From assembly GCF_018350175.1 (NCBI RefSeq), contig NC_058370.1:310001-374000 (forward strand): a DNA stretch of 64,000 nucleotides, written 5' to 3'. Under the pieces are notes generated by a model that saw nothing but the letters and a program-made list of their open reading frames with translations, was not told the origin of the DNA and did no database searches. The DNA comes from Felis catus (taxonomy: Eukaryota). Positions within the stretch are counted from its first letter, which is position 1; every line of letters begins with the position of its first letter. A program made the position numbers and the translations under genes. Shown here piece after piece: positions 176-55,702 of the stretch.

Positions 176-2559
176 TCATGCGGGCCGTGGTACTGTCTCA
201 GAGGTCTTGCAGGCGAGGGCCACATCCTTGGCAATGCTGCGCACACGGTCAGACACCTGCATCTCCCGGCGCAGGGCAGGAGCACAGCAGAACTTTCGGA
301 AGCAGGCCTTGAAATTCTCGTCCAAGAAAGCGTAGAGGATGGGGTTGAGGCAGCTGTTGACGTAGCCGAGGGCCGTGCAGAAACGCAGAACGGCCACTGC
401 GGTCTCACTGCCCGGCTGAACGCCCAGCCCTTGGACCAGCACGAAGACCTGGACGGGCGTCCAGCAGCCCACGAACACCGCCACCACCACCAGCACCAGC
501 CGCGTGATGCGCCTCAAGTTCCGGTCCTTCTCCCGGGAGCCGGACAGCAGGCGGACGCCACGCAGCCGCCGGATCATGAGGCTGTAGCAGATGGAGATGA
601 TGAGCACGGGGATGATGAAGGAGAAGAGGAAGATGCCGATGGCAAACACGGGGCCCCAGTAGTCCTGTGGGGCGGGGATCTCCACGAGACACTCAATCTC
701 TGCAGGGAGAAACACAGGGTCAGGGTGAGCGAGCCGGCACGGGGCCCTCTGGGGCCAGAGGACGACAGCACGGGGGAGGGGGGCCACCCACCGACCTTCG
801 TCCTCGACCTGCGCCGAGCCCATGATGGCGACAGGAACACCAACGACAGACGCCAGAGCCCAGATGGCCACGTTGACGGCCTGGGCCTTGCTGGACGTCC
901 GGACATCGAGAGCGCGGATGGGGTGGCAGATGGCTACATAGCGGTCCACGCTCATGGCGGTCAGCGTGAAGGTGCTGGTAAACATGTTGTAATAGTCGAT
1001 GGCAATGACTGTCTTGCACAGAGCATTTCCAAATGGCCAGAAGCCCAGGAGGACATCTGTGCCCTGGAAGGGCAGCGTCAGCAGCACCAAAGTGTCCGCC
1101 AGAGCCAGGTTAAAGATGTAAATGTTGGTGGCTGTCTTCATCTTGGTGTGCCTGCGGAGAGCACAGGGGGAAGGAAGACCTGGCCCAGTCCCTCTGGCTG
1201 GACCCGGCGGCGGAGGCCCGGGGGCCTTTCTTGTTGCCACCACCAGGAGCACCCGCCCCGAGACCCGTGTGGGAAGGCGGGCCCCCGGGCCCGGCACGAG
1301 GGACTTGGGGCACAAAACTGTGCCTCTGGCACACACAGAAGGCTTCCGAACCCCCAAACCGGTCCGCTTTGGGAAGGCTGGGATGTCAGGCAGCAGCAGA
1401 CCACCCCTGTGACTCCACGTGGGAGCAAGGGGACAGGAATCTTCAGAAAAAGGACCAGTCCCCCTCCCTGCCTTCCAAGTCTTCCTGAAGACAGTCCACG
1501 GACTACGATGTGGGCCCTAGACACACCAGAGGTTCCTGAGGGCTCCAGGGTCTGTAAAAGCACATCAGAGGCCTTCCGGTCCATGTTGTGGTCCGGCCAT
1601 AGAGACAGGAAACGGCACCAGAAATGGGAGGTGTGCCAACAAGACCTGGCTGTATCCAAGGGACAGGTCCGGGGACCTTATAGTTACGGAATAAACACCT
1701 GTCGAGTGGGGCACCTAGGTGGCTCAGTCACTTAAGTGCCCGACTGGCTCAGGTCACGATCTCGTGGTTCACGAGTCTGAGCCCCACATCAGGCTGTCAG
1801 CGCAGAGCCTGTTTGGGACCCTCTGTCCCCCTCTCTCTGCCCCTCCCCCACTCGTTCTCTCTCCCTCCCTCTCTCTCTCTCTGTCCCTCAAAAGTAAATA
1901 TATATTTTAAAAAATAATAAATAGGGGTGCCTGGGTGGCTCAGTTGGTTAAGCATCCAACTCTTGGTTTGGGCTCAGGTCACGATCTCATGGCTTCATGG
2001 GTTCAAGCCCCGCATCAAGCCTGCGCTGGCCGTGCAGAGACTGCTTGAGACTCTCTCCTCTCTCTCTGCCCCTCCCCTACTCGCACTGTCTGTGTCTCTT
2101 TCAGAATAGATCAATCAACTTTAAAAACCATCAAAAAATAATAAATAGCAAATAAATGCTTGTTGAATGAATCAATAGTTATCATGGTGGCAATGGAGGT
2201 GGTGGTTGTGGTGGGGATGGTGGTGGAGAGAATGCTGGGGACGGTGGTGATGACGGTGATTGTTGTGGCAGTGGTGGTAATTAAGGTGGTGGTGATTGTG
2301 GTGGTGGTGGTCGCACAACGCCAAAGATGTTGCCGTCACCAGGAACACCAATGTTCCCTGTAAACTCAGCTGCCATAAGGGAATCTGGGGGTCAGTGCTG
2401 CCTCTCAGAGAAGGATTAGAAACAAGCACAAACAGACCTTAATTATGACCAGATAAGAGCAACAATGACCACAGTGGCAGACACCTGAGCCAAGCTCTCA
2501 CATGGATTTTATCTCATTTAAATTTCAAAGATGCGTTGAAAAATAAAATTTAAAAAAAA

Positions 2560-2594
<35 letters not shown>

Positions 2595-4556
2595 ATTTCA
2601 AAGATGCGGGGCGCCTGGGTGACTCAGTCAGTTAAGCGTCCGACTTCAGCTCAGGGCGTGATCTCACGGTCCGTGAGTTCGAGCCCCGCGTCAGGCTCTG
2701 TGCTGACATCTCAGAGCCTGGAGCCCGCTTCGGATTCTGTGTCTCCCTCTCTCTCTGCCCCTCCTCTGCTCATGCTCTGACATTCTTTCTCCCTCAAAAA
2801 TAAATAAACATTAAAATATTTTTTAATTTCAAAAATGCTATTTTGATCCCCACTCTATGCAAGAGGACCCTTAGGCTCAGAGGATCTAAGTGGCCTTGAA
2901 AAGAGCTGGCAAAAAAGCAGAGAGGATCAAGAGAACTAGAAGACGAGCCACAGACAGGAGGAAAGATTTGCCAAAGATGCATTTGATGCAGGCTGCTGTC
3001 CAGAATACACAAGAAGGCTTAAAACTCGACAATAAGAAAACTAAGACTTTAACAGACACCTCACCAGTGAAAACAGCAACGAGATTCTGCTACACACCTC
3101 TTAGAACGAGCCATTTCCAGAACACTGACACCACACGCCGGTGAGGGTGTGGGGCGGCGGGAGCTCTCATGCGTTGCCGGCGGGCATGCCAAACGGTGCG
3201 GCCACTTTGGGAGACGGTTCGTTGGTCTCTTACAAAACTAAACATACTCTTACCATACGATCCAGCAATCACACGCCTTGATATTTACCCAAAGTTGTTG
3301 NNNNNNNNNNNNNNNNNNNNNNNNNNNNNNNNNNNNNNNNNNNNNNNNNNNNNNNNNNNNNNNNNNNNNNNNNNNNNNNNNNNNNNNNNNNNNNNNNNNN
3401 NNNNNNNNNNNNNNNNNNNNNNNNNNNNNNNNNNNNNNNNNNNNNNNNGATAAAAAGACATGAAAAGATCTGGAAGAACTTAAGTGCATATTCCTCAGTG
3501 AAAGAAGCCAGTATGAGAAGGCTACACGCTGTNNNNNNNNNNNNNNNNNNNNNNNNNNNNNNNNNNNNNNNNNNNNNNNNNNNNNNNNNNNNNNNNNNNN
3601 NNNNNNNNNNNNNNNNNNNNNNNNNNNNNNNNNNNNNNNNNNNNNNNNNNNNNNNNNNNNNNNNNNNNNNNNNNNNNNNNNNNNNNGTAGATACATGTCA
3701 AAACCCACAGGATGTACAACACTAAGAGTGAACCATAATGTAAACTATGGGCTTTGGGTGATTATGATGTGTTAACGTAGGTTCAATTGTAAAACTGAGT
3801 TGTAACTCGTTATAAAATGTACTATTCTGGTGGAGATGTTGGTAACAGGAGAGACCATGCATGTTGGGGAGCAGAGGCATATGGGCAATCACTGTACCTT
3901 CCTCTCAATCTTGCTGTGAATCTAAAACTGCTCTAAAAATAAAGTATCTTTAAAAAAAGCAGGACTTGGGGCGCCTGGGTGGCTCAGCTGGTTGAGTGTC
4001 GGATTTCAGCTCAGGTCATAATCTCGAGGTTCGTGAGTTCGAGCCCCGCGTCGGGCTCTGTGCCGATAGCCCGGAGCCTGCTTCCGATTCTGTGTCTCCC
4101 TCTCTCTCTGCCCCTCCCCCCCTCACGCTCTGTCTCTCTCTGTCTCTCAAAGATGAATACACGTTAAAAAAAATTTTTTTTTAAAGAGCAGGACTTGGAG
4201 CTGAGGTCCGGGACTCCAGAGGCAGTCCACCCCAGTCCACAGGCTCAGAATACACTGTGCTAATACTCGGACCAGGCCCCACACACCAGTGTCTCTGGGG
4301 ACTGCTGTGGGCAAGACAACCTTCCCTGCCTGCTCTAATCAGGATGTGGCTCTGAGAGTCCTGATGCCACAGTGCGGAGGAGACACACAGAGAAGTGACG
4401 ACAGCAAGAGTGAATAAGACCACCCCAGAGCGCCCGGGTGGCCCAGTCGGTTAAGCCTCCAACTTCGGCTCAGGTCGTGATCTCACAGTTCATGAGTTCG
4501 AGCCCTGGGTTGGGCTCTGCGCTGATAGCCCTGGGCCTGCTTGGGATTCTCTCTTC

Positions 4557-12082: not shown

Positions 12083-13068
12083 GCGTCAACAAGTCCAGGA
12101 GAGTCAGGGCTCAGTTGGAGGCTGAGACCCCGGAAGGCGGAAAGTATGGGGTGTACGGATGGGGGACAAGAGCCGGCCCCTCGACCAATGTAGCAAGAAT
12201 GAGTTGGGGGAGGGTGATGGCCTCCGGCAAATGCCACGTTGTGTGGCTCTGCCTGCGGCCCACAGTGGGCCAGAACCTGGCCCAGGGTCCGGGGCCTGAG
12301 GTGCTGTGGGCTCGGAAGGAAGGAGTCCTGCAGGGCTGAACCAGGCGCCCTGGGCGTTCCCGTCTCCTCTCTCGTGGGTCCTCCCCGCCCTATCACCTCC
12401 GTGGGCTCTGCTGTCATCTAGACCCAGCAGGGGACAGGCTAGGAAGACAGGGTTCCCCCCAAACACGTCCAGGGCAGCAACTGTCCAAGTTGCTTTCGGC
12501 CTCCCACAGACACACACCTCCCAGAAGGACATGAGTCCTCTGCCCAGGGCAAAACGGAAGCCCACCTACTCTCATCTCCAGCCCCTAACACTAAGGCCGA
12601 GTAGAGCAACCCGCCCCCCCCCGCCCCCCCCCCCCCCCCCCCGCTCCCGGGGTTGCAGTGCGGGGGCGGGGGGAGACTGGAGGTTTGCTGACTGACCGTC
12701 AACCACAGACATGGGGGACTGGGGCACACTGAGGGTCCCAGAATTGTGGGGAAGGGCCTGCCAAGCTTAACATGTTCTCTACCCTGGGTAGGGCCCCAGG
12801 TCTCCGCATTTTCTCGGTGGACAGAGAACCAGCCGGTGGGCAGGAAGGGAATTTCCTGAAACTCGGCGGATCAGAAATGTCTGGTTGACAGCAGGGGTAA
12901 GGAGGACGGGTGCTAGGCCCGCGCAAAGGTGCTGAGTCTGCAGATGCAGGACCTAAGGCCAGCTGCGGGGAATCTAGAAGGGCCAGAGCTGGGAGTGCAC
13001 GAGGGGGGAGGGGGGGGCCGGGCCGGTGCCAGTGGGACTCACTCTTCCCTCGGCAGAGCGGGCCGAGC

Positions 13069-13936
13069 ATGCAGTCGCCAGCAGAGAAGGAGGCCGGGCT
13101 CCGGGGCCCGCGGGAGCGAACCGGAAAGGGGTCCCTTGAGGAACGCGCCCGGGGGGCGCCCGCGGCGCAACCCCCCAAGCCAGGGTGGGCCCTGACGCTG
13201 GAGGGGCTGGCGGCCATGAGCTCCGCGCAGCGTCACCGCCACCTGCTCTTCGGTGACCAGCTTGAGGACGTGGGCGCGGCCGCCTCTATCTTCCCGCGCG
13301 AGTCAGTGGAGCTGGGGAGCCGTATGCCCGACCCGCGTGCGTGGACGCAGTCACCGGAGCCGCCCGGCGTGCGCGAGGACCGGCTCCTCGGCGTCCTCAA
13401 GGCAGCCGAGGCCCAGGGACGAATCCGCGCCTTGCGGCTGCGCTACATCCGCATGCGGGTGAGGCTCGGGGCCGGAAGGAAGGGGCGCGCAGGCGAGAGG
13501 GTTGCGGGGCGGGGAGGGGACACCAGCCCGGGTGCCCCGAGGAAAGGGGTGGGGGTGGGGGTGGGGGTGGGGGGCGCCCTGCAGGAGGCGGCGGGCGGAG
13601 CTAGGGCAAAACATCGCAGAGGCTTGGAGACCCGAACCCCCGCCCCACGACCCGCAGGCGGAGGAGATCTCGCTCCTCACCTGGCAGCAGAAGTCCGCGC
13701 GCGCCGCCATCCGGCTGGAGCTGTTCCTACCGCCGCAGCTGAAGCCCACGCGGATCCCAGACCCCCTGGATCGTCAAGAGGTGCCCACAAGCCCGGGAGG
13801 GGGCGGAGCGCGGGGGAGGGGGGTGCGTCCCGGCCCGCGTCCCCGCACACCTGGCCCCAGCCGCTCTCGCCCACAGAGGAGGCGCGTGGAGACCATCCTG
13901 GAGGAGAAAGTTGACGGCAGCGTCTTCCCACGTTGA
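13069..13936 (+). CDS. LKAAEAR1: LKAAEAR motif-containing protein 1 (C20orf201 ortholog), 190 aa. Exons 13069-13458, 13658-13780, 13877-13936
   Basis: PPKPGWALT...QRHRHLLFGD...RLLGVLKAAEAQGRIRALRLRYIRMR|AEEISLL...SARAAIRLELFLPPQLKP...DRQE|RRRVETILEEKVDGSVFPR*. GT-AG phase-0 introns give 390+123+60=573 nt. An acceptor at 13055-13056 implies an upstream non-coding exon. Confidence 0.93.
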
Positions 13937-43290: not shown

Positions 43291-43907
43291 GCGCCCACCC
43301 GGCCCGAGGCCACCGCCGTCTCCACCGCCGTCCGCCCTGCCCTCCGCGCCCGGCTCCCGAAGTGCCCGCTCTNNNNNNNNNNNNNNNNNNNNNNNNNNNN
43401 NNNNNNNNNNNNNNNNNNNNNNNNNNNNNNNNNNNNNNNNNNNNNNNNNNNNNNNNNNNNNNNNNNNNNNNNNNNNNNNNNNNNNNNNNNNNNNNNNNNN
43501 NNNNNNNNNNNNCTGAGCCGCGCGNNNNNNNNNNNNNNNNNNNNNNNNNNNNNNNNNNNNNNNNNNNNNNNNNNNNNNNNNNNNNNNNNNNNNNNNNNNN
43601 NNNNNNNNNNNNNNNNNNNNNNNNNNNNNNNNNNNNNNNNNNNNNNNNNNNNNNNNNNNNNNNNNNNNNNNNNNNNNNNNNNNNNNNNNNNNNNNNNNNN
43701 NNNNNNNNNNNNNNNNNNNNNNNNNNNNNNNNNNNNNNNNNNNNNNNNNNNNNNNNNNNNNNNNNNNNNNNNNNNNNNNNNNNNNNNNNNNNNNNNNNNN
43801 CGGGCGGGGAAGGGCGCGGGGCGGGGGTGGGGGGTGGGGGGAGGGACCTGGGGCCGGGCCGGGCGGGGGCCGGGCGGGGCCCGCTGACCCGCACCCACGG
43901 TCCGCAG

Positions 43908-44734
43908 GCAAGGCGTGGAAGGAGCTGAGCGCGGCGGAGAAGCGGCCCTTCGTGGAGGAGGCGGAGCGGCTGCGCGTGCAGCACCTGCGGGACCACCCCA
44001 ACTANNNNNNNNNNNNNNNNNNNNNNNNNNNNNNNNNNNNNNNNNNNNNNNNNNNNNNNNNNNNNNNNNNNNNNNNNNNNNNNNNNNNNNNNNNNNNNNN
44101 NNNNNNNNNNNNNNNNNNNNNNNNNNNNNNNNNNNNGGCGCCCGGCGCGGCCCGTGCCTTCCGCGAGCTGCCCCCGCTGGGCGCCGAGTTCGACGGCCTG
44201 GGGCTGCCCACGCCCGAGCGCTCGCCGCTGGACGGCCTGGAGCCCGGCGAGGCCGCCTTCTTCCCGCCGCCCGCGGCGCCCGAGGACTGCGCGCTCCGAG
44301 CCTTCCGCGCGCCCTACGCGCCCGCCGAGCTGCCCCGGGACCCCGGGGGCGGCTACGGGGCGCCCGCGGCCGAAGCGCTCAGGACCGCGCCCGCTCCCGC
44401 CGCGCCGCTCGCCGGCCTCTACTACGGCGCCCTGGCCGCGCCCGCAGCCGGCCCGTTCCCCGGCCCGCTGTCGCCGCCCCCCGAGGCCCCCCCGCCCGAG
44501 GGCGCCGAGACGCTGGGGCCCAGCGCCGACCTGTGGGCCGACGTGGACCTCACCGAGTTCGACCAGTACCTCAACTGCGGCCGGACTCGGCCCGACGCCG
44601 CCGGGCTCCCGTACCACGTGGCGCTGGCCAAGCTGGGCCCGCGCGCCATGTCCTGCCCCGAGGAGAGCAGCCTGATCGCCGCGCTGTCCGACGCCAGCAG
44701 CGCCGTCTACTACAGCGCCTGCATCTCGGGTTGA
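43908..44734 (+). CDS. SOX18: SoxF HMG-box transcription factor SOX18, exon 2 (gap 44005-44136). Exon 1 with the start codon lies in gaps 43373-43800
   Basis: Acceptor CCGCAG|[38 protein letters not shown] (HMG C-half), then [26 protein letters not shown]...[11 protein letters not shown]...[18 protein letters not shown]-type SoxF tail (here [19 protein letters not shown]). Confidence 0.96.
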
Positions 44735-53455: not shown

Positions 53456-55702
53456 CTAGGAGTCCTCGGAGGCTGCTGCACGCAGCGCGAAGAGCTTCTC
53501 CCAGCAGGTGGCGACGGTGTCCAGGACACGCAGGAGGAGCCGCCTCCGGCTGTGGCTGCGGCTGCGGCGACTCCGAGGAGGGTGCCTCTTGGGCCACCGG
53601 CTCCTCCTCCGCTGTCAGGGGCAGAAAGGTCAGCGAGTGACCACGGTCTCTGCGCCCTCCCCTCCCCCTCCCAGATGGGGACACCGCGGGACGGTGGGAG
53701 GCTCAGGGGACCTGTGGAAGGGGAGGGACCCGGGTCTGGCCCCACACACCTGGCGCATCATCCAGCAGTGGCGCCGCATCACTGCTTCGGTGCGCAGGGC
53801 TACAGTCCACGCGGCTTTCTCCAGTGCCCCGCGGCGGTGGCCCCGGGCCACCACCCTGCGCAGGGTCCGACCCAGGGACGCAATGGACAGCAGGATATCG
53901 TGCTCCTGGGAAAGGAAGGGAGGAAATTGGGGGCTGAGGAGAGGAGCTCAACGGGGAGGCCCCGGAGGGGAACAGCGTGAGTCTCCCCCCATACCTTCTG
54001 GGCACCGCAGGAAGCTCCCACCCGATCCCGATCCCGCCATCCGAGGACTGCAGCTCCAGTCAGGTTTTTCTGGATGAAATGGAGGTGTCGGGAGCCTGGC
54101 CCGACCTGCCTCACAGCAGCCTGCAGGTCCTCAAAGATGACCACACGGTAGTGGCGGAGCACGTCAGGGATGCTGCAGGTGCGGAGCCCTGCCTGACCCG
54201 GTGCGAGCCCCAGCAGAGCCAGCAGGAGCGCCCAGAGTGCAGGCTTGGGAGGCACCTGGAAGGGACGCGGGGTCAGGGTGGGGTGCCCAGGCGGGCAGAG
54301 GAGACCTTCCCTACAGCAACCCCTCAGGCAATTTGCTTTGGACGGCCCCCTACCACAGCCACCAGGGACTCTCTGAACTACAGTAGAAAATGAAAGGTCA
54401 CTGTGCCATTCATCGCCCAAGCATGGGTCTAGCAGGACAAACCCCTTCCTGTTTCAAGTCTGAGGGAAGGATAGATAGTAGGCCTGCGAACCAGACAGCT
54501 CAATGCTTGATGCATAGATTGGCGGGCTGGAGGATGGCCAGGGGTGAGGGTGAGGGTGGGGGGAGGCGGGCTGGGAAGGCAGGCCCACTGAGCCCTGAGG
54601 GGCCAAGAAGGAGACAGAGGGCTCCAGAGCAGGAACTCTGTGCTCTGTGTGCATGGGAACTAGGGGCTCACAAGACTGGAGGGCAGGGCTGACCCCTAGG
54701 TCTAGGGGTCCAGCGGGAAACACTACCTGCCGGTATGGCTACACCCCTGGCTATCCCCTAACTCAACCCCACACCTCCCAGACATCAGTCCCCACCAGAC
54801 AGCCAGGCTCTCTCCTCCTGATGAGCACCCCCTGATCCCCAGAACGTTGCTCACCTCTGGGTCCCCAGAGCAGGGGCAGAACTAACCCACCCCCACAGCC
54901 GTGGGAAATGGGGTGCCCTTGTACCTCCAGCCCAACCAGGACAGGGGTGAGGGCTCAGAGCTCAAGGCCACACCCCTCTGAGGAGGGGAGGAAGTCTTGG
55001 GGAATCCCCCAGAGGCAAGGGAGAAAGGGGCCACACTGTGCCCCACCAGGCATCCCTTTCACGAGCCTCCCCCTCCAGAAGGGGCTGGCTTGGGGAGAAA
55101 CCCACCACCACCCTCCCCCTAGAAGCCCAAACATCAAAGAGAAAGACCGGCTAGTTCCCAAACAGCGACTAGAAAATTAATCATGTGAACCCAGCGAGAC
55201 GCAGGACTCGACTCGGCTTCCCAGCCCTGGGAGGGGAGCCTGACCGAGCTGGGGACCTGGGGTGCAGCGCTGGCAGGAGGAGTGGGTGCCTTTAGCTGTG
55301 GCCCCTCCTCAAATCTGCCCCCAGGCATGCTGGGGGTGGGGTCAGAGGTCACAGCAAGAACAAGAGCTGTGGGTGTGGAGAGCCGTCCACATGGGGGAGA
55401 TTGGCTGCCCAGCTCTAGGAAGGCCTGCCTGTCCCCCACCCCAGCCAGTGAGAACCGAGCAGCCCTGGTACCGCCGGGCAGACCCCCACCCTTCCCCCCC
55501 CCCCCCCCCCCCCCACTGCCGGAAGGACAGGCAAGAGCACCCAGGGCCAGGCCTGCCAGGCCCTCCAGGCCAAGGTGACAGGAACCAAGGGAGGTTTCCC
55601 AGTAGGGGACAGACGCTCAAGCAGCCTCCCCTGGACTATGCTCGGTCCCAAACCCTCGACCAGAGTGAGCCCCCTCCCCACTGGCCCCACACTGCTCACC
55701 AT
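53456..55702 (-). CDS. C20orf204: C20orf204 ortholog, predicted secreted 191-aa protein. Exons 55700-55702 (ATG only), 53995-54255, 53750-53905, 53456-53611
   Basis: M|VPPKPALWALLLALLGLAPGQA (signal-like) GLRTCSIPDVLRHYRVVIFEDLQ...SCGAQK|EHDILLSI...AVMRRHCWMMRQ|RRRSR...LLLRVLDTVATCWEKLFALRAAASEDS*. All introns are GT-AG phase 0 and total 576 nt. The ATG|GTGAGC first exon is inferred. Confidence 0.88.

What the first reader, a model, noticed from the sequence alone, without database searches (positions are those of the whole stretch)
53456..55702. C20orf204 looks like an unrecognised IL-7/TSLP-family four-helix cytokine
Seen: signal-like N-terminus, N-glycan site N65-L-T, four amphipathic segments (about 29-51, 87-108, 115-135, 163-185), exactly four mature Cys (28, 84, 135, 176), and all introns phase 0. 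Against recalled human IL-7: CGAQK|E versus CDANK|E, with the intron at the same K|E position. LLRVLDTVATCWEKLF versus LKRLLQEIKTCWNKIL, keeping the helix-D Trp implicated in gamma-c binding. The helix-C exon ends C-x4-Q| versus C-x2-Q|. The four Cys map to IL-7 C2, C47, C92 and C141, which pair among themselves, while both partners of the separate C34-C129 bridge are absent. Against recalled TSLP: CSIPDVLRHYRVVIFEDL versus CDFEKIKAAYLSTISKDL, and VALRTEAVMRRHC versus FAMKTKAALAIWC, both gap-free. Inference: a third family member that may signal through IL-7R-alpha, gamma-c, CRLF2 or an orphan class I receptor. The human protein has been reported as nucleolar in liver cancer cells, which this view would need to accommodate. 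I cannot confirm that this homology is unpublished.
Basis: partly seen in the sequence, partly recalled or inferred. Interest (0 to 1): 0.93.

Follow-up and report, generated by a model that had tools for sequence, protein, structure and literature searches.

The report
Orphan IL-7-like cytokine gene (C20orf204)
This cat gene, known only as "uncharacterized C20orf204", appears to encode a secreted four-helix signalling protein that is an ancient sister of interleukin-7; it is present in all jawed vertebrates including humans, and its receptor is unknown.

Summary
A four-exon, minus-strand gene at 53456-55702 encodes a 191-aa felid C20orf204 orthologue. It has a signal-like N-terminus, an N65-L-T sequon, Cys 28/84/135/176 and only phase-0 introns.

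Orthologues occur from skate and teleosts to mammals, always just downstream of PRPF6. They share the same exon plan, four invariant Cys and an invariant C-W.

An AlphaFold2 model (pLDDT 75, pTM 0.70) is a four-helix bundle. In an exhaustive structure search the top 26 matches are all helical cytokines. IL-7 scores Z 10.8, TSLP 9.5-9.7 and IL-11 11.3, which is a tie.

A 43-sequence profile searched against all PDB sequences finds only human IL-7 (E 0.0016), collinear over the whole protein. The cat IL7 gene has its introns at the matching positions. IL7 and C20orf204 also sit beside paralogous neighbours (STMN2/TPD52 versus STMN3/TPD52L2).

The TSLP link is weak at sequence level. The Pfam IL7 and TSLP models are not met. 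The receptor is untested, and the Trp argument for gamma-c does not hold.

Published work shows EndoH-sensitive glycosylation of the human protein (so it enters the ER) but mainly nucleolar localisation. A 2023 paper already noted an interleukin/growth-hormone likeness.

Verdict: a probable IL-7 ohnologue and a new orphan cytokine candidate.

The parts
55700..55702 (-). Coding exon 1: the start codon only, followed directly by a GT donor (ATG|gtgagc)
   Evidence: The same ATG|gtaagt split is seen in a teleost orthologue.
53995..54255 (-). Coding exon 2 (aa 2-88): signal peptide, helix A, A-B loop, ending C-G-A-Q-K| in phase 0
   Evidence: In non-eutherians this stretch is two exons.
54190..54255 (-). 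Signal-peptide-like segment, aa 2-23. It has a Leu-rich core (ALWALLLALLGLA) followed by small residues (PGQA|G).
   Evidence: Sequence. The Leu core is conserved. The human protein is EndoH-sensitively N-glycosylated and partly ER-localised (PMC7969625).
54175..54177 (-). Cys28, at the N-terminus of helix A; aligns with IL-7 C2 and TSLP C34
   Evidence: Invariant in 43/43 sequences; alignments.
54070..54114 (-). Eutherian-only in-frame insert, aa 49-63 (VRQVGPGSRHLHFIQ). It begins gtgagg and ends catccag, so it looks like an exonised remnant of the ancestral intron after helix A.
   Evidence: An intron sits at exactly this position in marsupial, platypus, turtle, teleost and skate. This part of the model has low pLDDT.
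54058..54066 (-). N-glycosylation sequon N65-L-T67 in the A-B loop
   Evidence: A sequon is kept at this position in 37 of 43 vertebrate orthologues.
54007..54009 (-). Cys84, four residues before the K|E intron; aligns with IL-7 C47
   Evidence: Invariant; alignments.
53750..53905 (-). Coding exon 3 (aa 89-140): helices B and C, ending H-C-W-M-M-R-Q| in phase 0
   Evidence: The exon is equivalent to cat IL7 EAVFLY...NCTPK|.
53765..53767 (-). Cys135, at the end of helix C; aligns with IL-7 C92 and TSLP C110
   Evidence: Invariant; alignments.
53456..53611 (-). Coding exon 4 (aa 141-191 plus stop): polybasic C-D loop and helix D
53540..53611 (-). Polybasic C-D loop, aa 141-164 (RRRSRWPKRHPPRSRRSRSHSRRR). 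It is low-confidence in the model. It could be a proprotein-convertase site, as in TSLP, and it is the likely cause of nucleolar targeting when the protein is cytosolic.
   Evidence: A basic loop is present in all orthologues. The TSLP basic cassette and furin site are described in PMC5382266. Both the cleavage role and the nucleolar role are inferred.
53501..53506 (-). Cys176-Trp177 of the T-C-W-E-K-L motif in helix D; aligns with IL-7 C141-W142 (TCWNKIL)
   Evidence: C and W are invariant in 43/43 sequences; alignments.

Best explanation
The locus is the felid orthologue of human C20orf204. It most likely encodes a secreted, N-glycosylated, disulfide-stabilised four-helix-bundle cytokine of class I type. 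This cytokine is an ancient paralogue of interleukin-7, probably an ohnologue from the early vertebrate genome duplications, and more distantly resembles TSLP.

Shown here:
- The gene model.
- Conservation across all jawed vertebrates, next to PRPF6.
- The predicted helical-cytokine fold.
- A specific, collinear profile match to IL-7, including four Cys and the C-W motif.
- Intron positions and phases matching those of IL7.
- Paralogous neighbours at the two loci.

Inferred:
- After signal-peptide cleavage near A23|G24, the mature basic protein of about 168 aa forms two disulfides. By analogy with IL-7 and TSLP these would be C28-C135 and C84-C176.
- It is glycosylated at N65.
- It may be nicked in its polybasic C-D loop, as TSLP is.
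- It acts outside the cell through helices A/C and A/D on a class I cytokine receptor pair that is still unidentified.
- The nucleolar, nucleolin-binding behaviour reported in hepatoma and transfected cells is best explained by the fraction that fails to enter the ER. Its Arg-rich loop would act as a nucleolar targeting signal.
For: Family range:
- Orthologues occur in eutherians, a marsupial, platypus, turtles, birds, a caecilian, newts, sturgeon, teleosts and a skate.
- PRPF6 lies immediately upstream on the same strand in teleost, skate, turtle and cat.
- C4, C60, C111, C150 and W151 (mature numbering) are invariant in 43 sequences.
- The sequon is kept in 37 of 43.

Structure:
- The AF2 model has pLDDT 75.3 and pTM 0.70, with four long helices.
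- In the VIA-align search of 48,161 chains the top 26 rows are all helical cytokines. IL-7 (3di2_A) scores Z 10.8, rmsd 3.0 A, 100 of 115 residues aligned. TSLP scores Z 9.7 and 9.5. Other short-chain cytokines score 7.4 or less or are absent.
- The top Foldseek rows are also helical cytokines.

Sequence:
- hmmsearch against PDB sequences gave no hit with eutherians only, IL-7 as the best of three hits at E 0.031 with 34 sequences, and IL-7 as the only hit at E 0.0016 with 43 sequences.
- Cat IL-7 scores 20.4 bits, against a maximum of 10.3 in 5000 shuffles.
- Global hhalign gives P 8.4e-6 with all four Cys aligned.
- The hit survives a jackknife.
- There are weak Pfam hits to IL7 (E 0.045) and to TSLP (E 0.025, full length, sturgeon).

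Gene structure:
- The exon plan is: signal plus helix A | A-B loop ending C-x3-K | helices B-C ending C-x(2-5) | C-D loop plus helix D. All introns are phase 0. This holds in C20orf204 from skate to marsupial and in cat IL7.

Paralogy in the window's own genome:
- IL7 is at C46:27.70-27.75 Mb, with a stathmin gene at 28.41 Mb and a TPD52 gene at 28.76 Mb.
- C20orf204 is at C10:363-366 kb, with a TPD52 gene at 504-510 kb and a stathmin gene at 685 kb.

ER entry:
- C-terminally Myc-tagged human protein gives 24 and 26 kDa bands that EndoH removes, and it partly co-stains with KDEL (PMC7969625).
Against: - The same paper reports mainly nucleolar localisation and direct nucleolin binding, and it did not test secretion.
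- The sequence evidence is borderline (E about 1e-3; hhalign probability 65% against a single IL-7 sequence).
- No curated IL7 or TSLP model is met.
- By structure, IL-11 and IL-6 tie with IL-7. Foldseek E-values are not significant and list long-chain cytokines.
- A language-model search points to EPO/TPO, IFN-lambda, IL-34 and IL-10 clusters, not IL-7.
- The third IL-7 disulfide is absent, and the extra Cys pair of anamniotes sits elsewhere.
- The mature protein is extremely basic (pI about 12 in cat), which is unusual for a cytokine.
- No RNA evidence was obtained for the cat.
Confidence: 0.66

Rival explanations
1. It is a secreted helical cytokine, but not specifically a relative of IL-7. 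It would be either a long-chain, IL-6/IL-11/GH-like type or an independent lineage, and its IL-7-like motifs would be convergent features of disulfide-stapled four-helix bundles.
For: - IL-11 gives the highest Z (11.3, 139 residues aligned), and IL-6, CLCF1 and CNTF are within about 1.5 Z units of IL-7.
- The top Foldseek rows are CNTF, G-CSF, prolactin, IL-11 and IL-27.
- The helices are long, at 20-32 residues.
- The language-model neighbours are EPO/TPO, IFN-lambda and IL-10.
- The PROST paper aligned the protein to somatotropin (PMC9992864).
Against: - No long-chain cytokine in the PDB is hit by the family profile at E<=10, whereas IL-7 is.
- All four Cys and the C-W align with IL-7.
- Intron positions match IL7 exon by exon.
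- The two loci have paralogous neighbours.
Confidence: 0.16
2. Its physiological role is intracellular. It would be a basic nucleolar protein that binds and stabilises nucleolin and promotes rRNA synthesis, as published. The cytokine-like fold would be a relic or coincidence, and ER entry a minor side route.
For: PMC7969625 reports the following:
- Nucleolar co-localisation with nucleolin and fibrillarin.
- Direct GST pull-down of nucleolin.
- Growth promotion in HeLa cells.
- Nuclear staining in hepatocellular carcinomas.

In addition, the protein has 32 Arg and a pI of about 12.
Against: - A hydrophobic signal-like N-terminus, four invariant Cys and an N-glycan sequon have been conserved since the origin of jawed vertebrates. 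Such conservation makes sense only for a protein that folds in the secretory pathway.
- EndoH-sensitive glycoforms prove ER entry.
- Arg richness is a eutherian feature. Fish and amphibian orthologues have 4-14 Arg.
- The localisation data come from tumour cells and overexpression.
- The medium was not assayed.
Confidence: 0.13
3. It is not a real conserved protein-coding gene. It would be a lncRNA (LINC00176) with a fortuitous open frame.
For: It was originally annotated as a lncRNA in human, and reviews list it among 'lncRNA-encoded peptides'.
Against: The reading frame, exon plan, Cys framework and synteny are conserved from skate to cat.
Confidence: 0.02

Closest known systems
Interleukin-7 (Pfam PF01415; PDB 3DI2)
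   Same: - Predicted up-up-down-down bundle: Z 10.8, rmsd 3.0 A, 100 of 115 residues aligned.
- The only PDB sequence hit by the family profile.
- Cys at the helix A N-terminus, before helix B, at the end of helix C and in helix D, all aligned.
- The T-C-W-(E/N)-K motif.
- Phase-0 introns after helix A, after C-x3-K and after the helix-C Cys.
- Location in a paralogous chromosome block.
   Different: - Only 15-16% identity, and below the Pfam IL7 cut-off.
- It lacks the C34-C129 disulfide. Anamniote orthologues instead have a pair joining the helix B end to the C-D loop.
- Its helices are longer.
- It has an Arg/Lys-rich C-D loop and a much higher pI.
- The start codon is on its own exon.
- Its neighbour is PRPF6, not ZC2HC1A/PKIA (the latter from my own knowledge).
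- The receptor is unknown.
Thymic stromal lymphopoietin (Pfam PF15216; PDB 5J11, 4NN5)
   Same: - Structural match: Z 9.5-9.7 over 103-107 of 109-114 residues, 16-17% identity.
- Helix A motif C-x(8)-Y-x2-V-I-(F/Y)-x2-L.
- Cys at the helix A start and the helix C end, a pair that is disulfide-bonded in TSLP (C34-C110, PMC5382266).
- A polybasic cassette in a disordered C-D loop.
- Four coding exons with phase-0 introns, including a short A-B loop exon.
- A sturgeon orthologue aligns over the whole TSLP model at E 0.025.
   Different: - The sequence relationship is not significant: hhalign probability 6-20%, and the HMMER alignment is mis-registered.
- TSLP has L-W rather than C-W in helix D, and its helix D Cys is at the helix start.
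- TSLP has a different chromosomal context (C1 in this genome).
IL-6/IL-11/CNTF long-chain cytokines
   Same: They give the best or tied structural scores: IL-11 Z 11.3, IL-6 10.1, CLCF1 9.6, CNTF 9.3. The helices are of similar length.
   Different: - No sequence-profile signal at E<=10.
- From my own knowledge, which I did not test here, the Cys framework and gene structure also differ.
Published view of human C20orf204 / LINC00176
   Same: It is the same gene family. The glycosylation site, the Arg richness and the 189-aa product are as described in PMC7969625. PROST noted interleukin- and growth-hormone-like homologues (PMC9992864).
   Different: In the library I searched, the literature treats it as a lncRNA-derived, tumour-specific nucleolar microprotein. 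None of the papers that the C20orf204 searches returned proposes a signal peptide, secretion, an IL-7 relationship or its vertebrate-wide conservation.

Membership tests
IL-7 family (Pfam PF01415) | Scores above the curated gathering threshold of the family model (26.8 bits) | tested here: not met
   The window's exon pieces gave no hit. Of 34 orthologues, only 2 hit IL7, with a best E of 0.045. Teleost orthologues gave no hit.
IL-7 family (Pfam PF01415) | Significant sequence homology to IL-7 by profile methods | tested here: met
   - Human IL-7 is the only PDB hit of the 43-sequence profile: E 0.0016, 21.8 bits, collinear.
- Cat IL-7 scores 20.4 bits against a maximum of 10.3 in 5000 shuffles.
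- hhalign gives P 8.4e-6 and probability 65%.
- This is borderline. Deep IL-7 alignments were not available.
IL-7 family (Pfam PF01415) | Four-helix up-up-down-down bundle superposable on IL-7 | tested here: met
   Against 3di2_A: Z 10.8, rmsd 3.0 A, 100 of 115 residues. It ranks second of 48,161 chains and ties with IL-11. This uses a predicted model only (pLDDT 75).
IL-7 family (Pfam PF01415) | Cys framework: three disulfides, C2-C92, C34-C129 and C47-C141 (pairing inferred from a review, PMC7396566, which says the third bond joins the N-terminus to the end of helix C) | tested here: inconclusive
   Four Cys align with C2, C47, C92 and C141, but there is no counterpart of C34 or C129.
IL-7 family (Pfam PF01415) | Buried helix-D Trp in a T-C-W-N-K motif | tested here: met
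   C-W is invariant in 43/43 sequences. T-C-W-E-K aligns with T-C-W-N-K.
IL-7 family (Pfam PF01415) | Gene structure: phase-0 introns after helix A, after C-x3-K, and after the helix-C Cys | tested here: met
   Cat IL7 exons compared with C20orf204 exons in teleost, skate, marsupial, platypus, turtle and cat. The positions coincide in the HMM alignment, with the third within two residues.
IL-7 family (Pfam PF01415) | Binds IL-7R-alpha and gamma-c and activates JAK1/JAK3-STAT5 | not testable with these tools
   No receptor sequences were available by reference, so no complex prediction was run. This needs binding and signalling assays.
TSLP family (Pfam PF15216) | Scores above the curated threshold (27 bits), or a significant profile-profile match | tested here: not met
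   The best result is sturgeon P0202, E 0.025 and 15 bits, over model positions 4-125 of 125. hhalign against four TSLPs gives P about 1e-3 and probability 6-20%. The HMMER alignment to cat TSLP is mis-registered beyond helix A.
TSLP family (Pfam PF15216) | Four-helix bundle with a disordered polybasic C-D loop | tested here: met
   Z 9.7 (4nn5_A) and 9.5 (5j11_A) over nearly the whole chain. A basic, low-pLDDT C-D loop is present. The TSLP cassette is described in PMC5382266.
Secreted class I helical cytokines (general) | Cleavable signal peptide, entry into the ER, and secretion | tested here: inconclusive
   The signal-like N-terminus and the sequon are conserved. EndoH-sensitive glycoforms and KDEL co-staining of the human protein are published (PMC7969625). 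Release into the medium has never been assayed. No signal-peptide predictor was available here.
Long-chain IL-6/IL-11 type cytokines | Sequence or profile relationship in addition to fold | tested here: not met
   The fold scores are high (IL-11 Z 11.3, IL-6 10.1), but no such chain appears at E<=10 in the profile searches of all PDB sequences.

The most novel reading that the evidence does not exclude
C20orf204 is a third natural ligand of the IL-7R-alpha system, pairing with gamma-c, CRLF2 or an orphan chain. It could be the 'other IL-7R-binding cytokine' that would explain why inherited IL-7 deficiency is milder than IL-7R deficiency in humans (PMC11444196). From my own knowledge, not checked here, TSLP has not been found in fishes, so it could also be the ancestral partner of CRLF2-type receptors there.
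Probability: 0.15. Interest if true: 0.97.

Novelty: new member of a known kind. Interest (0 to 1): 0.8.

Why it matters
Class I helical cytokines are few, intensively studied and important as drug targets. A further one would be a notable addition, especially one related to IL-7 and conserved from sharks and rays to humans.

It would reclassify a gene now treated as a tumour-specific 'lncRNA microprotein'.

It would give a concrete candidate for IL-7-independent, IL-7R-dependent T-cell development (PMC11444196).

It would also supply a missing ohnologue for reconstructing how the IL-7/TSLP branch arose.

All of this can be tested directly with secretion, receptor-binding and STAT assays.

Tried and rejected
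- Pfam on the three exon translations gave nothing.
- The eutherian-only profile against PDB sequences gave no cytokine, only chance hits to ribosomal protein S15 and NRF1.
- The first AF2 run, with full length, signal peptide and 28 eutherian rows, was too poor to use (pLDDT 57, pTM 0.32).
- Foldseek against the PDB gave no match at E<=0.001, although the weak rows were cytokines.
- The ESM Atlas structure search gave only unrelated bacterial helical proteins at TM<0.45.
- The language-model atlas search gave the helical cytokine classes EPO/TPO, IFN-lambda, IL-34 and IL-10, but not IL-7. This supports the class, not the subfamily.
- The Pfam scan of teleost orthologues, prompted by the UniProt name 'Interleukin-7' for one of them, gave no IL7 hit.
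- TSLP relationship: only 12 carnivore, bat and pangolin TSLPs could be fetched. hhalign was weak, and HMMER aligned TSLP's C-D loop to the A-B loop, so I do not count that score.
- An IL-7 family alignment could not be fetched. The longest stop-free frame over a cat IL7 exon is 84 aa, too short for the length filter of the protein search. I therefore used the single cat IL-7 assembled from its exons.
Later work used other species' loci, other parts of the window, or local scripts.
- The search of earlier findings found nothing near the locus.
- Complex prediction was not used. No receptor sequence was available by reference, and I do not claim a specific binding partner.
- I rejected the idea that the teleost proteins are fish IL-7 rather than C20orf204 orthologues, because they lie next to prpf6.
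Full report
**What is in the window.**
The finding lies on the minus strand. Reading the reverse complement gives four coding exons with GT-AG introns, all in phase 0:
- 55700-55702, which is the ATG alone followed by gtgagc
- 53995-54255
- 53750-53905
- 53456-53611

The product is 191 aa. It has a Leu-rich, signal-like N-terminus, Cys at 28, 84, 135 and 176, one sequon (N65-L-T), and a 24-residue Arg-rich stretch at aa 141-164. It is 98% identical to the 'uncharacterized protein C20orf204 homolog' of cheetah and Geoffroy's cat, so the window comes from a felid.

**How widely the gene occurs.**
A first search found only placental mammals. A profile of 28 of these, run against 1.84 billion representative proteins, reached a marsupial, platypus, turtles, birds, a caecilian, a newt, sturgeon, lungfish and a skate. 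A second search with the non-eutherian sequences added many birds and turtles and eight teleosts.

In a 43-sequence alignment spanning all these groups, the four Cys, the Trp after the last Cys, and a few hydrophobic positions are invariant. The sequon is kept in 37 of 43 sequences, and all orthologues are basic, with pI 9.7-12.

Orthology is backed by synteny. PRPF6 lies immediately upstream on the same strand in a teleost, a skate and a turtle. In the window's own genome the PRPF6 N-terminal exons are at C10:412,645-414,038 and the gene is at C10:363,456-365,702. This is therefore an old gene of jawed vertebrates and not a lineage-specific lncRNA frame.

**Fold.**
A model built from the eutherian alignment with the signal peptide was poor (pLDDT 57). 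The mature protein modelled with the diverse alignment gave pLDDT 75.3 and pTM 0.70. It has four confident helices at model residues 6-26, 58-85, 91-110 and 133-164, and two low-confidence loops.

Foldseek against the PDB gave no significant E-value, but nearly all of the best rows were helical cytokines: CNTF, G-CSF, prolactin, IL-11, IL-27 and IL-6.

The exhaustive VIA-align comparison with 48,161 representative chains returned helical cytokines in all of the top 26 rows:

| Chain | Z | Notes |
|---|---|---|
| IL-11 | 11.3 | |
| IL-7 (3di2_A) | 10.8 | rmsd 3.0 A, 100 of 115 residues, 15% identity |
| IL-6 | 10.1 | |
| mouse TSLP | 9.7 | |
| CLCF1 | 9.6 | |
| human TSLP | 9.5 | |

Among short-chain cytokines, IL-7 and TSLP stand well above the next (IL-15 at 7.4). 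IL-2, IL-4, IL-21 and GM-CSF are not listed. By structure alone the protein is a helical cytokine, and IL-7/TSLP tie with the IL-6 family. A language-model search agreed on the class (EPO/TPO, IFN-lambda, IL-34, IL-10) but not on IL-7.

**Sequence relationship to IL-7.**
No Pfam family is met. Profile searches against all 177,635 distinct PDB sequences became steadily more specific as the profile grew more diverse:

| Profile | Result against PDB sequences |
|---|---|
| Eutherians only | No cytokine |
| 34 sequences | Human IL-7 first, E 0.031 |
| 43 sequences | Human IL-7 the only hit at E<=10; E 0.0016, 21.8 bits |

The 43-sequence alignment is collinear, from profile positions 11-137 to IL-7 residues 12-149. 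It pairs C-x3-K-E, the helix-C Cys, and T-C-W-(E/N)-K.

I assembled the cat's own IL-7 from the exons found in its genome. It scores 20.4 bits, and none of 5000 shuffles exceeded 10.3 bits. Global hhalign gives P 8.4e-6 and puts the four Cys on IL-7 C2, C47, C92 and C141.

The signal survives removal of the felid row or of the one sequence that reads TCWNK. It needs the full vertebrate diversity, as a true remote relationship would.

Weak hits in the other direction exist: Pfam IL7 at E 0.045 for two members, and Pfam TSLP at E 0.025 over its full length for a sturgeon orthologue.

**Gene structure.**
In skate, teleost, turtle, platypus and marsupial the gene has this plan, with every intron in phase 0:
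- M
- signal peptide plus helix A, ending ...L
- K-N-x-T ... C-x3-K
- E ... helices B and C ... C-x4-(Q/K)
- C-D loop plus helix D

Cat IL7 reads ...ISINYL | DTMIKNRTNC...CDDNK | EAVFLY...NCTPK | ... | EDSKSL...TCWNKIL, also all in phase 0. In the HMM alignment the first two introns coincide exactly and the third falls within two residues. Cat TSLP has the same general plan, including a short A-B loop exon.

**Paralogous chromosome blocks.**
In this genome:

| Locus | Position | Stathmin-family gene | TPD52-family gene |
|---|---|---|---|
| IL7 | C46:27.70-27.75 Mb | 28.41 Mb | 28.76 Mb |
| C20orf204 | C10:363-366 kb | 685 kb | 504-510 kb |

Each of these families has only three or four multi-exon loci in the genome. 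The window also holds a single-exon rhodopsin-type receptor and LKAAEAR1.

From my own knowledge of the human map, these are the 8q21 and 20q13.33 parts of a well-known paralogon from the early vertebrate genome duplications (STMN2/STMN3, TPD52/TPD52L2, SOX17/SOX18, TCEA1/TCEA2, OPRK1/OPRL1, NPBWR1/NPBWR2). That IL7 and C20orf204 themselves descend from that duplication is an inference, but it fits the sequence, Cys and intron evidence.

- *Disulfide pairing.* A review states that the IL-7 disulfide not traced in the crystal joins the N-terminus to the end of helix C (PMC7396566). The pairs are therefore C2-C92 and C47-C141. The first pair matches TSLP C34-C110 (PMC5382266). The expected bonds here are therefore C28-C135 and C84-C176. 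I could not check this because model coordinates are not provided.
- *The Trp.* The same review says IL-7's single Trp is buried in the core and linked to folding. Its conservation supports common ancestry of the fold and not gamma-c binding.
- *TSLP.* The sequence evidence is not significant. The link to TSLP rests on structure, helix A, the shared Cys pair and the polybasic C-D loop.

**Secretion versus nucleolus.**
The only functional paper (PMC7969625) reports mainly nucleolar localisation and nucleolin binding of the human 189-aa protein. It also reports that the C-terminally Myc-tagged protein gives 24 and 26 kDa forms that EndoH removes, and that part of it co-stains with KDEL.

N-glycosylation happens only in the ER lumen, so the N-terminus does work as a signal sequence in at least a fraction of molecules. 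The medium was not examined.

A hydrophobic leader, four invariant Cys and a conserved sequon are hard to explain for a purely nuclear protein. I infer that the Arg-rich loop drives nucleolar accumulation of the fraction that is not translocated. That loop is far less Arg-rich in fish and amphibians.

**Prior knowledge.**
Forty papers in the library mention C20orf204, and most treat it as a lncRNA-derived peptide. [quoted passage not shown] UniProt's automatic name for one teleost orthologue is 'Interleukin-7'. I found no paper proposing an IL-7 relationship, a signal peptide, secretion or the deep conservation. The library does not cover all journals.

**Limits.**
- All structural evidence rests on one predicted model.
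- The sequence E-values are near 1e-3.
- No deep IL-7 alignment could be fetched.
- No receptor test was possible.

**Verdict.**
- The best-supported reading is a secreted helical cytokine that is an ohnologue of IL-7 (confidence about 0.66).
- The main rivals are a helical cytokine of another lineage (0.16) and a chiefly intracellular protein (0.13).
- It is a new member of a known kind. Interest is high because it points to an orphan cytokine shared by all jawed vertebrates.

Noticed in passing
window 54070-54114 (-): The 15 codons between helix A and K-N-L-T exist only in eutherians. They begin gtgagg and end catccag, and they sit exactly where marsupial, platypus, turtle, teleost and skate have a phase-0 intron. 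This looks like an intron that shrank and became coding in the eutherian stem. It is 45 nt in this felid and about 72 nt in most other eutherians.
   Followed up: partly
window 55700-55702 (-); L016:10001-10003: The start codon is alone on the first coding exon (ATG|gt) in both the cat and a teleost. This odd split is therefore ancient. Many database models replace it with longer upstream exons, which would bury the signal peptide.
   Followed up: partly
alignment A4, columns 95 and 143/147: All 13 teleost, sturgeon and amphibian sequences carry an extra Cys at the end of helix B together with one in the C-D loop. No amniote has either. This is probably a third disulfide lost in amniotes. It is not at the positions of IL-7 C34-C129.
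   Followed up: partly
protein P0218 (Zoarces viviparus, UniProt A0AAW1DZ67): UniProt names this teleost C20orf204 orthologue 'Interleukin-7', while NCBI calls it hypothetical. Pfam IL7 does not hit it, and the rule behind the name is unknown.
   Followed up: partly
window 176-1357 (-) and 12910-13914 (+): There is a single-exon rhodopsin-family receptor ORF (7tm_1, E 2e-64) and an LKAAEAR-family ORF (E 9e-24). From my own knowledge these are probably NPBWR2 and LKAAEAR1, which fits a 20q13.33-type region.
   Followed up: no
window 3301-3448, 3533-3686, 43373-43512, 43525-43800, 44005-44136: These are runs of N (850 bases in all). I left them as they are.
   Followed up: no
L004 (G000:C46, IL7 signal/helix A exon): The frame upstream of VSFRYIFG reads ...LFNL, with no ATG where other mammals start IL-7 (from memory). 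The cat initiator was not located.
   Followed up: no
The stretch encodes the T-C-W-E-K-L part of helix D.
   Followed up: no
L009-L011 (G000:C1:170.50-170.51 Mb, TSLP): Carnivore TSLP has a short A-B loop exon (VKSTEFNNYIYCEDP) between the helix A exon and the helix B-C exon. All of its introns that I read directly are phase 0, so its plan parallels those of IL7 and C20orf204.
   Followed up: partly
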